Origin: Guillardia theta CCMP2712
Taxonomy: Eukaryota > Protista > Cryptophyta
DNA length: 64,000 bases
Assembly (NCBI RefSeq): GCF_000315625.1
Contig: NW_005434605.1
Coordinates: 52,407 to 116,406, forward strand
Reading direction: 5' to 3'
Numbering within the stretch: position 1 is the stretch's first letter; every line of letters starts with the position of its first letter. The notes beneath the pieces were generated by a model, which was not told the origin of the DNA, did no database searches, and saw nothing but the letters and a program-made list of their open reading frames with translations. Of the stretch, positions 19,321-28,200 are shown piece after piece. A program made the translations under genes and the position numbers.

Positions 19321-20120
19321 CGAAACCGGTTGAAGTTTCAAATTTTCCATTGTTTTACAGGTCCTCACCCACCCCCATGGAGTCTCAAATTCGGTAACAA
19401 GGAGGGGTGCTCGAATTTGGTTGTGTCTCATCAATCCGACTGTAAAACAAGCAGAAAACAAGAGGTCCTTCTATTGCTGAGTTATAGGATTGCAATATTT
19501 TTGGAGAATTTTATGTATAATTCTTAATAATTATATATAATATTGGATTGCCTTTGGCCAGAATATACCGCAAACTTCATATCCTATTCTTTCATCAGTA
19601 AAAAATTGGTGGAAGGCAGAGAGGCCGGCCTCCATGGCGGGAACAAGAGACCGCAGGGTGAGAAGAAGGGATGGCAAAGTAGAGATGTGTGGTGTGCACA
19701 CAACCTTCAATGTGACAAAATGTCTTGTGCATGGATGAGAGAAGTTTGGGAATCAACGACGAAGAGATTGAGCTCGTTGTTGTGCATTGAGCAGTCCTAG
19801 AACCTGTGCAGTTGGGCGTCGCAACGGAGCGAAATCACATTTTTGGAGAAGCGTTTTTCAACTATCTAAATCATAAGGACTGAAACGTAAGAAGAAGCAT
19901 GACAACAGGGGTGTGCTGTGTCCATGATAGGCTGAGGTGAGGGCAAGGAAGACTTGGGGTCAAAATGGTAGCTTGACGAAACATCTCATTACACGGCCCC
20001 TGTGAAGGGCCGAGCATTCAGCTTGATATTCTTCTTGTGTAAATTTGTTACATTCAACGGTCAAAGGCAATTTGCAGAACTAAAGGGAGGGAGAATACTG
20101 ACTGTCAGAGCGCATTGAAA

Positions 20121-21440
20121 ATGGCGGATCAGTCAAACCGGAAGGAGAAAGGCTCTAAATCAGCAGGGAAGAAAGTAGAAAAGAAGACTTCGATTGGGGT
20201 CGTGCATGTATCGATTGTTATAGCTGTCCTTCTAGCCTTCAACGGTGTGTACATGAAGCAAAGAGCGGACTCCTTGATCGCCGAATGTGCCAAACACCAC
20301 GAAGAAGGCGATATGGTGACCGCCCTGCAACTCTGCAGGAATGCGCATTCGCTGTACATGGCCTTGAACGACTACACCAAGTATGCCGGGTGGAAGGATG
20401 GCTTCTTCATAGCAGACGTCATACAGTCACTGGTGATCTATCTCTATCTATCTACGCTGCCGTCACTGACTTGGGTTGGCATGCAGGACAACATTGGGGT
20501 GGTGATGATGAACCTGGGGGATCACGCAGCATCTTTGCAGTATCACGTCCGTGCTCTGCGATTGACAGTCGGAAAGTTTGGAGAGAAGCATGTGAATGTA
20601 GCGGCAGTGCAAGACAAGATCGGGCTTGTCTACCGTGACATGAACGACCTTGAAAATGCCCTCAAGTGGCACGAGCGAGCTTTTCAGATGCGAAATGAGA
20701 TCCTTGGAGAGAGAGACTTGGGGACAGCGACGTCAAAAAGTGCGATTGCTGACGTTTACTTCCAACAAGGAGACTTTGACAAGGCTCTCAGCTTGTACAC
20801 GGAAGTTCTCGAGATTCAGGTGAAGCCTCGTTGTGGCATCGTCGATTCTTTCTGATTCGATCCCATTGAAGGAACAAGTTTTGAGCCATGACCATTTGGA
20901 CGTGGCAGCAACTCTTCACAACATTGCGATCGTCCTGAAGAACAAAGACCTTGATGCAAGCTGGGAGAAGTTTGAGAAGAGTCTGGGGATCATCGTGGGG
21001 GTCTATGGATACAACCATCGAAGTGTCTCAGACACTTTGAGCAGTATGGCCACCATCAGATTTGCGCAGAAGAACTGGGAATCGGCGCTTGACACCTTCC
21101 AGCAGGTAAGTTGCCCGTTAGAAACGTGTCAGGAAACGATCTTGACTCTGTGCCAGTCTCTGGACATAGCGAATAACGTCCTTGGGAAAGAACACCCCGA
21201 TGTCGCGTCTACCTTGTACGGCATGGGAGCCACATACGCGAAGTTGGGCAGGAGCGAGGAGGCGGAGGAAAAATATAGGACGGTAAGAGGAGGCGGTGGA
21301 CGATCTTATGAACTTAGAAAACCTCATTTCTGTCGATGCAGGCGAAGGAGATTTGGGAGATGAATGGAGTGAATTGGAAAGAAGGAATTCAACACCTTGT
21401 ATCACCCGAAATTCTTGAAACTGAAGAGCAGGGAACATAA
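20121..21440 (+). CDS. Membrane-anchored TPR protein (kinesin-light-chain/nephrocystin-3 type 42-aa repeats), multi-exon
   Basis: TM VVHVSIVIAVLLAFNGVYM. Repeats GEKHVNVAAVQDKIGLVY, GERDLGTATSKSAIADVY, SHDHLDVAATLHNIAIVL, GKEHPDVASTLYGMGATY. Last exon ends EEQGT* (TAA 21438-21440). Confidence 0.85.
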
Positions 21441-21844: not shown

Positions 21845-22500
21845 AGATCTAGAGGGTAGGGGTGGATTGAAACCTTAGATCAGGGGTGGGTAGTTTCGAT
21901 ATACCGGGTCTGTTGTGTGAAATTTGGGGGGTAGGGGTGTGTACACTGTTGTTAGGTGACGGTCCACATAAATGTCGATGGTGGGGTACGAGGAGATTGT
22001 TGACCACCCCTGTATTGTACTGCAATATTGAGGTATCTGACAGGTAGGGGTGTAACATATAAGAGAGTGCCTTCAAAAGACCCCCCATTCAAACACTTTG
22101 ATTAGCCTTTGTAAGGGTGGGGTAGAGGAGGCGTAGGATGCTATCAAACCAGAGGGTGGGTGGGGGTACGTGAATTCGGATTCTTCTCACAGGAGAGGGG
22201 AGGGTTCAGAGCATGCTTGGTTCGTAGGGGTGGTAGGTCATAAACATACAGTAAGGTAGGGTAGGGTAGCAGAGGAGTGGTGGGTGGGGTGATATTTCTG
22301 ACTGCACGGGTATCTTGTTATAGGCGATTCATTATATAAAAGGGGGTAGGGTACTTTGAGATTGTGAGTGGTAGGTAGTCCGACCATGAAAACAATGGGT
22401 GGGGTTCATTGAGGCTTGTGGGTGGGTGAGGTGGTGTGAAACTCAGGGGGTGGGTGGAGTAGGGGGTGGGGGTCACGGGGGGAAAATGTGACGGCAGAAT
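21845..22500. repeat. Strand-asymmetric G-run region rich in GGGTAGGG/GGGGT motifs
   Basis: Many GGG(G)TAGGG and GGGTGGG runs on +; reverse-complement ACCCCTACCC motifs recur at about 10.0-10.33, 58.7 and 61.15 kb. Confidence 0.55.
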
Positions 22501-23067
22501 GGCGCGAGGAGGGCAGTTAGTTAAGAGTAGCACAAAGGGAGATGAAGGGAAGGATCTAGGAAAGAATGGAAGAAGTGAACGATCGAGATGTAGAAAGCAA
22601 TGAAAGCAACAAGTCTGAGAAACAGCAGTTAAAATCAGGGTATGAGGAATCTACTTCAGAACGTGGGTTTACCCAACACTGTAGAGGGTCTGGGAGTGCT
22701 CGATCAGTACGGACACGAATTAGACTAGGGAGCTGATCATCAAATTTTGTATTGTCATCTTCACCATCATGATTTGTGGGTGTTGAGCTAGATGTGTAGG
22801 TGGGAACTTGCTGTATTGGTGTGCATAGATACGGAAGATTAACTTTTATTACTGCCCCCCACTTGGTTCAATGTCTAGCCGATCAGAAAAGTCTTTTGGT
22901 GAACTGACTCGCTTTCTGCTGCAGCTTGGGTCATGAGCAGTCAGTTCCACACCTAATCCCTGCCTATATCTTTACATAGTTCCACCTGCCTGGATCGTAT
23001 TTCTTATCCCTTCCTCCTCCTTTCCTCCTCCTCCTCCTCCTCCTCCTCATACCCATAGTCAAGCTCC

Positions 23068-25069
23068 ATGGCAACAACCATGTCGTGCACTGCGAAAAGT
23101 TTGTGCGGGTTCATGCTGCTATGCCTGGCTGGAGCTGCCTCAGCTTGGTCAACTTCGTTCCATACTGTGCAGAGCCTCGGGGGTTCGCAGCGAATGAGGT
23201 TGAGCAAGGCTGTCGATGTTATGCCTGCCCTCCGGCTGACGAGGAAGAACGGCATGCAGAAGAGGTGTGCCTGACGGTATGACAAGGTGCCTCGGAACTG
23301 ATCGCTCTATGGCAGGGGAGCGACATTGAACATGATGACTGTTCTAGACGCTTTGTCCAGCCCGATGGTGCTCACAGCAGAGCCATCGGGACCTTGGATG
23401 GTTTTGGAAGGATAGCCATCAACATCCCGAGATATATGCCGTGAGCAGTGCAGCCGCCGAGCAATTCTCCATCTTTACCCTTCCTGCCAGGAAACTTTTG
23501 TCACAGAAGGATTTGGGCGATGACGCGGGCAACAAGGTCTCGTTGTCTGAACTTCGCGAATATGTTGTGGAGGATTACGTGAGATTGGAATTGTTCCCCT
23601 GCTCTGTGCCTGACGTACTTCCTTGGTAGGGTGCCAAGTTGGATCTGATCAAACTTTTCGTTTCGTGTGACGTGCAAGGGACTGGAGTTATCTCGAGCGC
23701 CTCTGTCCACAAGCTCTTCGATGAGCAAGGTGTGTTCATGCCGGTACTGGGTGAGGGACGAGGATGTTGACGAGTCGGGACAGAACGAGGAACCTTTCGC
23801 ATCGGAAGCAAATGGGTGACAGCGGATAATATCCTCGAGGTGTTCGAGATGTTCTGATCGTAACTGTCCACTGACATGGCATGCAGCTGACGGGGCTGGA
23901 CAGGATGACGAGCATCAACTACATCAAGTTCATGGGAACGATTGTGGAGGCGGCTGACCTGGAGGACATGCGAGTGAAGGCGCAAGCGAAGCTCGTGTCC
24001 GATGGCTACGAGGCCTGCAAGGACATGACAAGCGAGTACGCCAAGACTTTCTACCTCGCCACTCAGACTATGCCCGACGAGCAGGCCATGGCCACGTGGG
24101 CGATCTATGCCTGGTGCCGGCGAGTCGATGAGATCGTTGATGGCCCCAATGCGCTGGCGGAGGCGTCCATGCAGGAGGAGAGCCTGCGGGAGTGGATGGA
24201 TCGGCTGGAGAGGATGTGGGAGGGGAAGAACTTCAACGGGCTGAACCAGTATGACGTGGCGTTCGCGGACATGATCCGAAGGTTCCCGGGCAGCGACATC
24301 GAGCCGTACAAGGACATGGTGAGAGGGATGATGATGGATGTGTCCGACGAGGTCAAGTACGATAGCTGGGAGCAGCTCTACCTCTACTGCTACAGAGTCG
24401 CGTCGACCGTTGGGCTGATGACGCTGCCCGTCATGGGGACTGCGGAGGGAGTGACACAGGAGGATGCACGGGAGTCCGCGATTGCGCTAGGGATCGCGCT
24501 TCAGCTGACCAACATCCTTCGGGACGTGGGGGAGGACGCGAGGGACAGGGGAAGGATCTACCTGCCCGAGGAGGACATGAAGAGGTTCGGGGTGGACCCA
24601 CAGACTGTGCTGGACAGGAGCTTGAAGGGAGGGGAGGTAGACGACGCCTACCGCAACCTGATGAAGTTCGAGATCGAGAGAGCTCGGGAGTACTACAGGC
24701 AGGCCGAGAAAGGGATCCCGATGCTCGCCAAGTCTGCCCAGCTCCCAGTGGCAGTGGCCATGGAGCTCTACCGAGAGATTTTGGACAAGATTGAGCTCAA
24801 CGACTATGACAACTTCAGCCGCCGAGCTTACCTGACAGGTAAAACACGCACCTCCCCTCATCTCCTGTACCCTCTTGCCTCCCGCTCCCCCTTTCCTGTC
24901 TTCCTCCCTCTCCTCTGCCCCTCCTGCTCTTCCCCTCCTTCTCTTCCACCTTCCTGAACTCATTGAACCGGTTCTCACTCACCCTGATGGAATTGCAGGG
25001 TTCGAGAAGCTCTGCAAGCTGCCTGGCGTCTGGCTGCGAGTGATCACAGGGAGCTGGAATGTGGCGTGA
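23068..25069 (+). CDS. PSY: Plastid-targeted phytoene synthase with N-terminal degenerate EF-hand module, multi-exon
   Basis: YAKTFYLA, IYAWCRRVDEIVDG, YCYRVASTVGLM, LGIALQLTNILRDVGEDARDRGRIYLP, YDNFSRRAY. Leader MATTMSCTAKSLCGFMLLCLAGAASA-WSTSF (signal peptide then aromatic +1 residue). Confidence 0.93.
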
Positions 25070-25297
25070 GAGGAGGAGAACATGAGCTTTTAGATGCTCT
25101 GTACAAGTACGACAGAAGCGAGCAGGATGGAGTATGACTAACAAGTGAAGTAAATTTTGTTTGAGTATCAAAGGGGTCTGTATCACAGCAAGTCGTCTTC
25201 GGGCCTGTCATGGCGTTCATCACCTCAGTCAGAAGAGGGGGGAAAGAAGGAGAGGGAGGTCATCTCAGGGAAGGAGGGGGAGACTGCAGAGTAGGTC

Positions 25298-28200
25298 CTA
25301 CCGTAAGGGCGGCATCTTGCCGTGCTTGCGGTAATACCTGTACTGGTACTTGAGTCTTTTGAGTGACTCCTTCTCATAGCCTTTCCTGTGCGCCATGTGT
25401 CAGTCTGTCAGGTGTTCTAATGCAAGCTTCTCACTTCAAGCAAGGATTCTCCTCAGGGATTGGTTGGAGCTCTGAGTGACAAGCAAGTGAGTCAGGACGT
25501 GGCAGCACCAGCACCAGCACCAGCACCAGCACCAGCACCAGCACCAGCACCAGCACCAGCACCAGCACCAGCACCAGCACCAGCACCAGCACCAGCACCA
25601 GCGGCACAAGACAAGGTCCGCAGCGGCGGCGGCGGCGGGGGGGAAGCAGCAGCAGCACCAGCACCAGCACCAGCACCAGCAGCAGCAGCAGCAGCAGCAC
25701 CAGCAGCAGCACGAGAGAACCAGAAGTCTCACCAGATTCGGGGATGATGTCGAGGCGGTTTGAGTCATGGAGGACGAATTGATCGAGCCAAGTGCGAATT
25801 CCAAAGGTAGTTCCATCTTCTCTTTTGATTCGGCCGTGCCAACTGTCCTGCATGTTGTTGTATTCATGCTGAATCATACTGCACATGTTGCTTGCTTCCT
25901 TCAACATCTGCCCGAACATCGTCATCTCCCGCCATCTCAGCCTTGATGCAACCTCTTCCACAGTCATGTTCAAGCCTTTTTCTCGTTTGAAATCCTCCAG
26001 GGCGCTCCAGATCTTCAGCACATCATCAGAAGGTGAAACGCTACTTCAAGATTCACCTCATCTATCTCTTTCCTCACTTGCTCATTGTCTGAACAAAAGA
26101 CCAACACCAGGCCCGATGTCAATCGAGTTGTTGTAAATTCGAAGGCATCATTTACCTATCTCTCCATCCTCGTTGATGCTGAACTTTGGGTCCCGTATTT
26201 TTGCAACGTTTGGAGTTGCATTTCTCTTTCAAACAAACTTCAAACGCAGTGCCTCCAAGAACTGCAACAACCTTCTTCCAGTCGTCTTTATGCTTCCAAA
26301 CTCCCTGCGCTGTGTGTTCCTCGACGATTTGGTCAAATCTGGGCGAGACTGAGTGACCTCATGGCAACCAATCTGGCTCACGTCTTCTTCAGATCTTCCC
26401 TCATGTTGTCTAATTCCGCACATTTCTCCTTCCCTGCAGTCTAGTCATGACATACCATGAGGGAAAGAAACTGGATCGTACAATCGCACACTGTAGTGTT
26501 AAAGGCCTCGATGTCACGGGGATCGACCATCAACTGACAGATACACATCATGTTGCTATTCTTGAACGACATCGTACACCTCTTTCTGAAGAAATTCTAC
26601 CACGTGCGGATGATTATTTGCAATCGCGTACTGCAGTGCACTTCAAAGTGTGTCAGTCAAGAGAACGGACAGGTTGCACACAAACAACTTGTAGCCAAAG
26701 GCGTCAACTTGGCTCAGGATCCGGTGCCCCTGGTCAAAGTGAGCGGCAGGAGGCATCCTCTGCATTCTAACCTCAACTCTGTTTACCGGCGACCTTCCTC
26801 CCTTCTTCCTCAATGTGTGACAGGCTCCTCGTTCGTACAAGATCTTGTCCCAGGGTCAGGACCGACGTACTGTTTGTTTACATCTCAGGACCTTGAGGAC
26901 ATGAAGGTTCCCATACGCAGCTGCTAGGATGAGAGAAGTCTGCAGTATATCATGCACCTACACTCTCTTCCTCTCCTTCACCTGGTTGTTGTTGTTCACC
27001 GCTCTCACGTCCGCGCCATGGTCGAGAAGAACCTTGAGGAACAATCAACCCGTTATCGGACAACCAAGTTCTCACTTTCGCAGTCATGTTGCAGTTGCCG
27101 ACCTGGGAAGAAAATAGATCACGAAGCTGTCGTTCTCAGAGGGAAACTTACAGCGCACGAGTGCAGGGCAGTTCCGTTGCCAAATTCAGCGTCTCGAGCG
27201 ATGTTCACCTAAAGTTTCCTTACGAACTCATCTCAACATACAGAGTCTTCCAACCTGAGCTCCAGCTTCGATGATTTTCGGAATAATTTCGTGCTGCTCG
27301 TGGAGTGTTGCAAATCTTAGAAACAATGACCTCAGTGACCAAATTGCACAACATTTCACTGTCACATCAAACGTTCATTCAGTCGCTCCACAGTCAAACT
27401 GTTGGAGAAAACGTCAGACTGGATTTTGCGTCACATGAAACTGCACAGACTTGATCAAACTTTGTTCTGTGATGATGTGTGTCTCCCAGCTCGCAGGAAG
27501 CGGTTTCCAAGTTGCATTCAGCCAGATATTATCGGTCCAATTTCCAGCTACCCTCCTCCCAACGTACTGAAAGCAAGCATGTAAGGAGAATTTCAACATC
27601 ATTAGTCAGTAGTCCTCAAGAAAACAAATCGTGATGAGTTACAGCTCAAACAGGTACATAAAGAGACGGTTTCTATCACCGGGTCATAAGGCCAATCTTC
27701 GTCGTTGGCTTCCTCTAGGGGAGGGTTTTGATAGCCCGGAAACGTCTCATTGTCAGCATACCAGTTCGCAAACGACTCGTTGTCAGTGTAACGTGTTAGA
27801 GTGTAGTTTTCTAGTCTTGCTGACTCCTGCAGCATGCTCCAAATTTCAGCTTCAATCTCAGCATCGTCCTTGAAGCCTTCCTCGTCGTCCCCAGGTCCCC
27901 GGTCATTATCTTCCAAAAATCCGCGCAATCTCTCGTCGTCCCCAGATTCCCAGTCTTCCTCTTCCCCGAATCCGCGCAATCTCAACGCAGGAGGGCTCCA
28001 ACCCGATAACACAACCGAAGAGCATGACTTCAAGATTCCAGGCTGCCTTCGACTTGCAATCAGTCTCTTCACAACTACTGCTCCCACGCCTCTTTTCCTC
28101 GCTGATCTTTCATCGCTTTCCTTCAATCCAACATTACAATCGCCATCGCAGAAATCTGAGAACCCAGCGAAGTTGTTGCCTTCAACTCTGTCTCCTGGGA

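What the first reader, a model, noticed from the sequence alone, without database searches (positions are those of the whole stretch)
23491..23960. Calmodulin-like EF-hand module fused in front of phytoene synthase
Seen: small exons between the plastid leader and the PSY core splice to GDDAGNKVSLSELREYV...LIKLFVSCDVQGTGVISSASVHKLF...VTADNILELTGLDRMTSINYIKFMGTI. These are three helix-loop-helix units with calmodulin-like spacing. Established: plant and cyanobacterial PSY/CrtB are single-domain enzymes at the committed step of carotenogenesis. The loops are degenerate (unit 1 lacks Asp1; units 2 and 3 lack Glu12). Inference: a regulatory module giving Ca2+/Mg2+ or partner-dependent control of carotenoid flux in the plastid.
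Basis: partly seen in the sequence, partly recalled or inferred. Interest (0 to 1): 0.75.

Follow-up and report, generated by a model that had tools for sequence, protein, structure and literature searches.

The report
Phytoene synthase with worn-out EF-hand pair
This cryptophyte alga's phytoene synthase, the first committed enzyme of carotenoid synthesis, really does carry a small extra domain descended from a calcium-binding EF-hand pair, but in this gene copy both calcium sites have decayed, so it probably works as a calcium-blind structural or docking piece while a sister copy elsewhere in the genome keeps intact sites.

Summary
The gene (23068-25069, + strand, 7 exons) encodes a 529-residue plastid-targeted phytoene synthase (PSY).

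The window lacks one G after 23379 that every transcript carries. The reading frame closes only with it.

The insert is one EF-hand pair, not three calmodulin-like units:
- Exon 4 is EF1. Exon 5 and the start of exon 6 are EF2.

The window's own sequence matches no EF-hand profile. Both loops (DVQGTGVISSAS, GLDRMTSINYIK) lack the acidic residue at position 12. Homology runs through intermediates to a sister clade with canonical loops, which includes a second PSY in this genome.

The motif-plus-EF-pair module occurs only on PSYs of one clade, whose only named members are cryptophytes.

Best reading: a calcium-insensitive structural or docking adaptor. The scan had already noted the canonical paralogue on other DNA (s1-453412). 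I found no paper describing the fusion.

The parts
23068..23264 (+). Exon 1: start codon and bipartite plastid leader. A hydrophobic signal peptide ends in small residues and is followed by Trp, then a transit-peptide-like stretch.
   Evidence: Transcript joint 23264/23316. The exon translation continues into P0001. Relatives' leaders show Phe or Trp after a small-x-small site. The targeting reading is inference from established cryptophyte leader rules.
23316..23440 (+). It holds the conserved hydrophobic Gly/Ala-rich motif (P0001:30-64, window 23332-23435). The window lacks one G after 23379 relative to all transcripts.
   Evidence: Joints and the 'put in behind 23379: G' row. There are 11 invariant columns across 14 relatives. 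In the genome search the motif matches in two frames that break at 23379/23380.
23491..23578 (+). Exon 3: low-confidence loop plus helix P0001:84-93. It is a helix in front of the EF pair, not a supported EF-hand.
   Evidence: Relatives have no EF-like loop at this place.
23630..23729 (+). Exon 4: EF-hand 1 (helix, 12-residue loop, helix). The loop DVQGTGVISSAS lies at 23669-23704.
   Evidence: AlphaFold2 gives H95-108, strand 115-117 and H118-127 with pLDDT above 90. It aligns to the canonical loop DTDEDGKLSIDD of the paralogue.
23784..23839 (+). Exon 5: short beta-hairpin insert between the two hands (specific to clade A) and the entering helix of EF-hand 2.
   Evidence: Strands 133-135 and 138-140 and H142-148 in the model. 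The insert is present in all clade A rows.
23887..24838 (+). Exon 6: EF-hand 2 loop GLDRMTSINYIK (23893-23928) and its exit helix; a long connecting helix (about 23950-24039); the SQS_PSY catalytic domain with both Asp-rich motifs (24127-24141 and 24523-24537).
   Evidence: Pfam PF00494 at 2.7e-73. D228, D232, D360, E363 and D364 are invariant in 58 PSYs.
24999..25069 (+). Exon 7: the last 22 residues and the TGA stop.
   Evidence: Joint 24838/24999. The exon maps to P0001:466-487 and the stop codon was checked.

Best explanation
What it is (shown). The gene is one of two nuclear PSY paralogues of a Guillardia-type cryptophyte. After a bipartite plastid leader, the mature protein has four parts: a strongly conserved hydrophobic motif, a helical linker, one EF-hand pair, and a long helix running into a catalytically intact PSY domain.

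Origin (shown). The EF pair descends from a canonical Ca2+-binding pair that was already fused to PSY before the two paralogue clades split. Clade B, which includes this genome's second copy, keeps canonical loops. Some clade A members keep a canonical EF1.

How it works (inferred). In this copy both loops have lost the ligands needed for high-affinity Ca2+ binding, while the fold is kept. It most likely acts as a Ca2+-independent adaptor that holds the hydrophobic N-terminal motif, a possible membrane tether, in a fixed relation to the catalytic domain, or that grips a helix in cis or in a partner. That is how non-binding EF pairs of myosin light chains work. Any Ca2+ responsiveness would then rest with the clade B paralogue.
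For: - Splicing and expression in three studies; exact exon-to-protein mapping.
- PSY domain and Asp-rich motifs intact.
- Second PSY on G000:C68 is identical to P0016, with Pfam EF-hand_7 at 37.7 bits, above the cut-off of 30.
- The 25 nearest PSYs form one clade (SH-aLRT 100) that splits into A (window) and B (P0016, Proteomonas, Baffinella).
- Module homology A versus B: 99.4%, E 2.4e-21. EF region only: 95.4%, 1.9e-8. Window EF region versus the other clade A members: 76%, 2.2e-5 over 83 columns.
- Clade A profile hits EF-hand proteins in the PDB (1.4e-5).
- AlphaFold2: the EF region has pLDDT of about 90 in both models, and the full-length pTM is 0.82.
- VIA-align: 49 of the 50 rows listed are EF-hand proteins, best Z 6.4 over 80 residues.
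- Loop table.
- dN/dS of the EF pair in two clade A orthologue pairs is 0.27-0.28, against 0.03-0.08 for the core.
Against: - No metal-binding measurement exists. Gln3, Thr5, Ser9 and Ser12 of EF1 are oxygen donors, so weak Ca2+ or Mg2+ binding is not excluded.
- The structural Z-scores are modest, and Foldseek alone gave nothing at E<=0.001.
- The window's EF region is only 13-21% identical to its orthologues, and its terminal branch is long (0.53 against a median of 0.14). Relaxed constraint in this species cannot be ruled out.
- The membrane-tether role rests only on hydropathy, which is 1.4-1.5 in clade A and below the usual 1.6 threshold. AlphaFold2 leaves the motif unmodelled.
- I had no model coordinates, so the EF-to-core interface was not examined.
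Confidence: 0.6

Rival explanations
1. One reading: a calmodulin-like, three-unit sensor that puts this PSY under direct Ca2+ or Mg2+ control.
For: The module is EF-hand derived. EF1 keeps Asp1, Gly6 and Ile8 plus oxygen-bearing side chains. Relatives with canonical loops exist. A weak, non-significant alignment of the linker to EF1 of an Entamoeba Ca-binding protein appeared once, with a domain E-value of 1.8.
Against: - Pfam finds no EF-hand at E<=10.
- Neither loop has an acidic residue at position 12, and EF2 has Gly1, Met5 and Lys12.
- Only one pair is modelled and matched.
- Unit 1 is not conserved as a loop in any relative.
Confidence: 0.12
2. A vestigial spacer: the EF pair of this copy is decaying neutrally and serves only as a linker between the conserved N-terminal motif and the enzyme.
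For: EF-region identity to orthologues is very low at 13-21%. BLASTP between the EF regions of the two paralogues of the same genome finds nothing. The terminal branch is long. The linker and EF pair evolve about 3 to 10 times faster than the core.
Against: The frame is open and spliced across four small exons. The hydrophobic core pattern is kept well enough for a pLDDT of about 90. Orthologue pairs show purifying selection on the EF pair, omega 0.27. The length and the position of the hairpin insert are kept across clade A.
Confidence: 0.2
3. A dying gene: the one-base gap at 23379 is a real frameshift and the locus is a transcribed pseudogene.
For: As given, the window breaks the frame at 23379/23380.
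Against: All three transcript assemblies and the stored protein P0001 carry the extra G, which restores the T-A-G-A residues invariant across clade A, three of them across all 14 relatives. The catalytic residues are intact. Transcript depth is high. One of the RNA assemblies bears the same organism label as the DNA runs that hold 0.97-0.99 of the stretch.
Confidence: 0.04

Closest known systems
Plant, algal and cyanobacterial phytoene synthase (PSY/CrtB; Pfam SQS_PSY PF00494)
   Same: The catalytic domain is the same, with both Asp-rich motifs invariant. It is 50-54% identical to named haptophyte and ochrophyte PSYs among others.
   Different: It carries a roughly 165-residue N-terminal module (hydrophobic motif, linker, EF pair). 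That module is absent from the 95 PSYs outside this clade among the 120 best hits.
Second PSY of the same genome (P0016, G000:C68) and its clade B
   Same: The architecture and the N-terminal motif are the same. The modules are homologous.
   Different: - P0016 has canonical loops (DTDEDGKLSIDD and DSDKDSQIDCYE) and passes Pfam EF-hand_7; the window copy has neither.
- The window copy has a hairpin insert between the hands.
- Its module is split over four exons, against one exon in the paralogue.
Calmodulin C-lobe and the CDPK calmodulin-like activation domain
   Same: A single EF-pair fold: Z 4-4.8 with about 68 aligned residues for calmodulin, and a family-profile E-value of 1.6e-8 to the CDPK domain. 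As in CDPK, the module is fused in cis to an enzyme.
   Different: There is one lobe rather than two. The window's loops lack the Ca2+ ligands. The partner enzyme is a prenyltransferase, not a kinase.
Non-Ca2+-binding EF-pair proteins (myosin essential light chains, MTIP)
   Same: They are among the structural matches at Z 3.7-3.8. They keep the fold without functional loops and act by gripping a helix.
   Different: No target helix has been identified here. The resemblance is a working analogy, not a membership.
Other plastid proteins with fused EF-hands: plant RSH4/CRSH and the brown-alga/diatom EF-hand-Tic20
   Same: A plastid protein gained EF-hand motifs by fusion in one lineage (PMC5633626; PMC6720183 abstract).
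   Different: The enzymes and lineages differ, and no carotenoid enzyme is among them.

Membership tests
Phytoene synthase (SQS_PSY, PF00494) | Profile match above the curated cut-off | tested here: met
   247 bits against a cut-off of 26, E 2.7e-73.
Phytoene synthase (SQS_PSY, PF00494) | Two Asp-rich substrate/Mg2+ motifs intact | tested here: met
   D228, D232, D360, E363 and D364 are invariant columns in 58 PSYs, the window protein included.
Phytoene synthase (SQS_PSY, PF00494) | Condenses two GGPP molecules to 15-cis-phytoene | not testable with these tools
   Needs an enzyme assay or E. coli complementation.
EF-hand pair (Pfam EF-hand_7 and its clan) | Own sequence matches an EF-hand profile | tested here: not met
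   No Pfam hit at E<=10 for P0001:1-180, and none at E<=0.01 for the whole protein. The best phmmer hit in the PDB is a calmodulin-related protein at E 0.34.
EF-hand pair (Pfam EF-hand_7 and its clan) | Homology to bona fide EF-hand pairs through intermediates | tested here: met
   Window to clade A, E 2.2e-5. Clade A to clade B, E 1.9e-8. Clade B to Pfam EF-hand_7, 2.6e-9 to 3.1e-10. Clade A profile to PDB EF-hand proteins, 1.4e-5.
EF-hand pair (Pfam EF-hand_7 and its clan) | Two helix-loop-helix units paired through short strands in the loops | tested here: met
   The AlphaFold2 model has four helices and strands at loop positions 7-9, with pLDDT of about 90. VIA-align gives Z 6.4 over 80 residues and Z 4-4.8 to calmodulin lobes. 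The Z-scores are modest and Foldseek alone was not significant.
EF-hand pair (Pfam EF-hand_7 and its clan) | 12-residue loop with oxygen ligands at positions 1, 3 and 5 and Glu or Asp at 12 | tested here: not met
   EF1 is D-x-Q-x-T-G-x-I-S-x-x-S. EF2 is G-x-D-x-M-T-x-I-N-x-x-K.
EF-hand pair (Pfam EF-hand_7 and its clan) | Binds Ca2+ | not testable with these tools
   Needs calorimetry, 45Ca overlay or a thermal-shift assay on the recombinant module.
Calmodulin-like protein (two lobes, four EF-hands) | Two EF pairs joined by a linker | tested here: not met
   Only one pair is modelled and matched, at model residues 69-147. The N-terminal 50 residues are unstructured in both models.
EF-hand PSY clade whose only named members are cryptophytes (both paralogue clades) | N-terminal hydrophobic motif, EF pair and PSY in one chain, grouping with named cryptophyte PSYs | tested here: met
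   A module HMM hits 16 of the 120 best PSY relatives, all within the 25-row clade. The motif alignment has 11 invariant columns.

The most novel reading that the evidence does not exclude
Cryptophyte PSYs are tethered, EF-hand-gated enzymes, and the two ancient paralogues divide the work. Clade B senses stromal Ca2+. The window's clade A copy is a Ca2+-blind partner that heteromerises with it or competes with it at the same membrane site through the shared N-terminal motif. Plastid Ca2+ transients would then switch flux at the committed step of carotenoid synthesis.
Probability: 0.15. Interest if true: 0.8.

Novelty: new variant of a known kind. Interest (0 to 1): 0.58.

Why it matters
PSY is the flux-controlling entry step of carotenoid synthesis, and its known controls (transcription, the OR protein, Clp protease, membrane association) all act in trans; that list is from general knowledge. 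A sensor-type domain built into the enzyme would be a different kind of control.

It would also place an EF-hand protein in the plastid, where classical EF-hand proteins are reported to be scarce (PMC4844381 abstract).

This window supplies the natural control. The same genome carries one PSY with intact Ca2+ loops and one with decayed loops on the same scaffold. That makes the Ca2+ hypothesis directly testable by comparing the two proteins. It also shows the module is kept even where Ca2+ binding is probably lost.

Tried and rejected
- Pfam on single small exons found nothing, as expected for 29-33 residues.
- phmmer of the window module against PDB sequences: best EF-hand hit E 0.34, not significant.
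- BLASTP of the EF regions of the two paralogues gave no alignment.
- Foldseek against the PDB gave nothing at E<=0.001, although the top rows were EF-hand proteins. I relied on VIA-align and on profile homology instead.
- The language-model atlas placed the window's EF region next to EF-hand clusters at 0.91-0.92. By the tool's own calibration this is only a lead.
Organism names for the unlabelled relatives could not be obtained, and the look-up of encoding contigs gave only metatranscriptome sample ids.
- The first tree call was lost. It was repeated with the quick method.
- I looked for a third EF-hand in exon 3 and rejected it for lack of conservation and model confidence.
- I looked for an EF-loop in the conserved T-x-D-G-x-G-R stretch of exon 2 and rejected it: the stretch is unstructured in both models and lies in a hydrophobic motif.
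- The upstream TPR gene was compared with a TPR-PSY fusion from another alga and showed no specific similarity, E 0.26.
Every exon was searched by reference, and the stored protein P0001 stood in for the spliced product.

Full report
**Gene structure**

The window carries a eukaryotic gene on the + strand from the ATG at 23068 to the TGA at 25067-25069.

Transcript contigs from three runs of three different studies (X1, X2, X4) were laid on 22700-25400. All three show the same six GT..AG joints. These remove 23265-23315, 23441-23490, 23579-23629, 23730-23783, 23840-23886 and 24839-24998.

Each exon was translated by reference and located in the stored, transcript-derived protein P0001 (487 residues). 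Every piece matches exactly, with one-residue gaps at the split codons. With the 42 residues of exon 1 that lie upstream of P0001's first Met, the precursor has 529 residues.

**A one-base discrepancy**

All three transcript assemblies carry a G after window position 23379 that the window lacks. Without it the frame breaks. With it the protein reads the T-A-G-A residues that are invariant across clade A, three of them across all 14 relatives. A genome search with the motif profile finds the window copy in two frames that meet exactly at 23379/23380.

**The enzyme**

The large exon gives Pfam SQS_PSY at 2.7e-73. In an alignment of 58 PSYs, both Asp-rich motifs (D228/D232 and D360/E363/D364 of P0001; window 24127-24141 and 24523-24537) are invariant.

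Exon 1 encodes a hydrophobic signal peptide. It ends in small residues followed by Trp, and then a transit-peptide-like stretch. The relatives that include a leader show Phe or Trp at the same place. From established knowledge of cryptophyte targeting, this points to import into the plastid stroma. That is inference.

**Organism and paralogue**

The assembly has 87.1 Mb in 669 contigs.

Searching the whole assembly with P0001 finds a second PSY on another contig (G000:C68). Its translation is identical to the database protein P0016.

P0016 carries an EF-hand pair that passes Pfam's own threshold: EF-hand_7 at 37.7 bits against a cut-off of 30, E 2.6e-9. So do P0020 and P0021. The scan had already reported that paralogue from other DNA (s1-453412). 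My result agrees with it and was obtained independently.

**The family**

- Among the 120 best PSY relatives, an HMM of the N-terminal module hits 16.
- A maximum-likelihood tree puts the 25 nearest sequences in one clade (SH-aLRT 100). The two named cryptophytes, Proteomonas and Baffinella, are in it.
- That clade splits into clade A (the window protein, on a long terminal branch of 0.53) and clade B (P0016).
- No haptophyte, ochrophyte, red-algal or euglenid PSY in the set has the module.
- An exhaustive profile search of 1.84 billion representative proteins found that every hit spanning both the hydrophobic motif and the EF pair is a PSY or a fragment of one. One is a more distant 582-residue member, P0146. 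The other hits are generic multi-EF-hand proteins that match the EF part only.
- Five literature searches were run. Four of them looked for a paper on an EF-hand-PSY fusion and found none. The fifth looked for other plastid proteins with EF-hands.

**Is the window's insert an EF-hand?**

On its own sequence, barely:
- Pfam gives nothing at E<=10.
- The best PDB EF-hand match is E 0.34.
- BLASTP against the paralogue's EF region finds nothing.
- hhalign against the clade B EF profile aligns only EF1, at E 5e-4 and 32% probability.

Through intermediates the link is firm:

| Comparison | Result |
|---|---|
| Window EF region vs the other clade A members | E 2.2e-5 over 83 columns |
| Clade A vs clade B, EF region only | E 1.9e-8, 95.4% |
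| Clade A vs clade B, whole module | E 2.4e-21, 99.4% |
| Clade A profile vs PDB EF-hand proteins | E 1.4e-5 |

AlphaFold2 models of the module and of the full protein give four helices, with short strands at loop positions 7-9, at pLDDT of about 90. The full-length model has pLDDT 85 and pTM 0.82. VIA-align matches model residues 69-147 to EF pairs: Z 6.4 over 80 residues for a calmodulin-like domain and Z 4-4.8 for calmodulin lobes. Of the 50 rows listed, 49 are EF-hand proteins. These Z-scores are modest and Foldseek alone was not significant. The fold assignment therefore rests on structure and profile homology together.

- There is one EF pair, not three units.
- Exon 4 is exactly EF1 (helix 95-108, loop 109-120, helix 118-127).
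- Exon 5 adds a beta-hairpin insert found in all of clade A, plus the entering helix of EF2.
- The loop and exit helix of EF2 open exon 6.
The loop before it is modelled at low confidence, and no relative has an EF-like loop there.
It is a hydrophobic Gly/Ala-rich motif (P0001:30-64) with 11 invariant columns and dN/dS of 0.04-0.09.
- In this genome the motif occurs only in the two PSYs.
- Its mean hydropathy is 1.4-1.5 in clade A and 1.9-2.3 in clade B. AlphaFold2 leaves it unstructured. A membrane tether is a reasonable guess, but only a guess.

**Metal binding**

The loop table shows a gradient:

| Sequence | EF1 loop | EF2 loop |
|---|---|---|
| P0016 (clade B) | DTDEDGKLSIDD | DSDKDSQIDCYE |
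| P0014 (clade A) | DSNGDGTVDLDE (canonical) | begins with Gly, as in all clade A |
| Window protein (clade A) | DVQGTGVISSAS | GLDRMTSINYIK |

The window protein is the most worn. It has one acidic ligand in EF1, no acidic residue at position 12 in either loop, and Lys at position 12 of EF2. From the established geometry of EF-hands, high-affinity Ca2+ binding is unlikely, though this is untested.

The domain is not free to drift in the clade. Two orthologue pairs give dN/dS of 0.27-0.28 for the EF pair, against 0.03-0.08 for the core. No such pair was available for Guillardia itself.

**Verdict**

The module is EF-hand derived and fused to PSY. It is a single, decayed pair, most likely Ca2+-blind, that serves as a structural or docking adaptor. 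The Ca2+-sensing idea belongs to the paralogue and clade B.

Novelty: a new variant of a known kind, namely a known enzyme with an undescribed built-in EF module, so far seen only in a PSY clade whose only named members are cryptophytes. The canonical and decayed versions side by side in one genome offer a ready experimental contrast.

Noticed in passing
window 23379/23380: The window lacks one G that all three transcript assemblies and the stored protein carry, which breaks the PSY frame in the genome sequence. It is probably an assembly error, and any gene model built on the genome alone would be wrong here.
   Followed up: partly
window 25204-25300 and onward, minus strand: A CT..AC joint (a minus-strand intron) lies just past the PSY stop. 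Two 3.6-kb transcript contigs run through both genes, so a convergent neighbour overlaps or abuts the PSY 3' end. Its ORFs gave no Pfam hit.
   Followed up: partly
window 25497-25720: A long hexanucleotide microsatellite of CACCAG units runs into CAGCAG and GGC runs, inside the region of the minus-strand neighbour.
   Followed up: no
window 20115-21360, + strand: The gene just upstream of PSY encodes TPR_12/TPR_10 repeats. A PSY from another alga (P0048, 54% identical) carries an N-terminal TPR_12 stretch. The two TPR parts are not specifically similar (E 0.26), and TPR_12 is common in this genome with at least 97 matches. This is probably coincidence.
   Followed up: partly
window 22000-22500: A G-rich stretch full of GGGTGG-like words lies upstream of the PSY gene, with strong GC skew (0.21 in the 22001-24000 bin).
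   Followed up: no
G000:C28:237273-238049 (L003): A third SQS_PSY-like locus in the genome, 39% identical to the PSY core with no N-terminal module match. It may be a squalene-synthase-type or other family member.
   Followed up: no
G000:C68 (L002), minus strand: In the paralogue the whole leader-plus-module region lies in one exon, while the window copy splits the same region over five exons. The introns were either gained here or lost there.
   Followed up: partly
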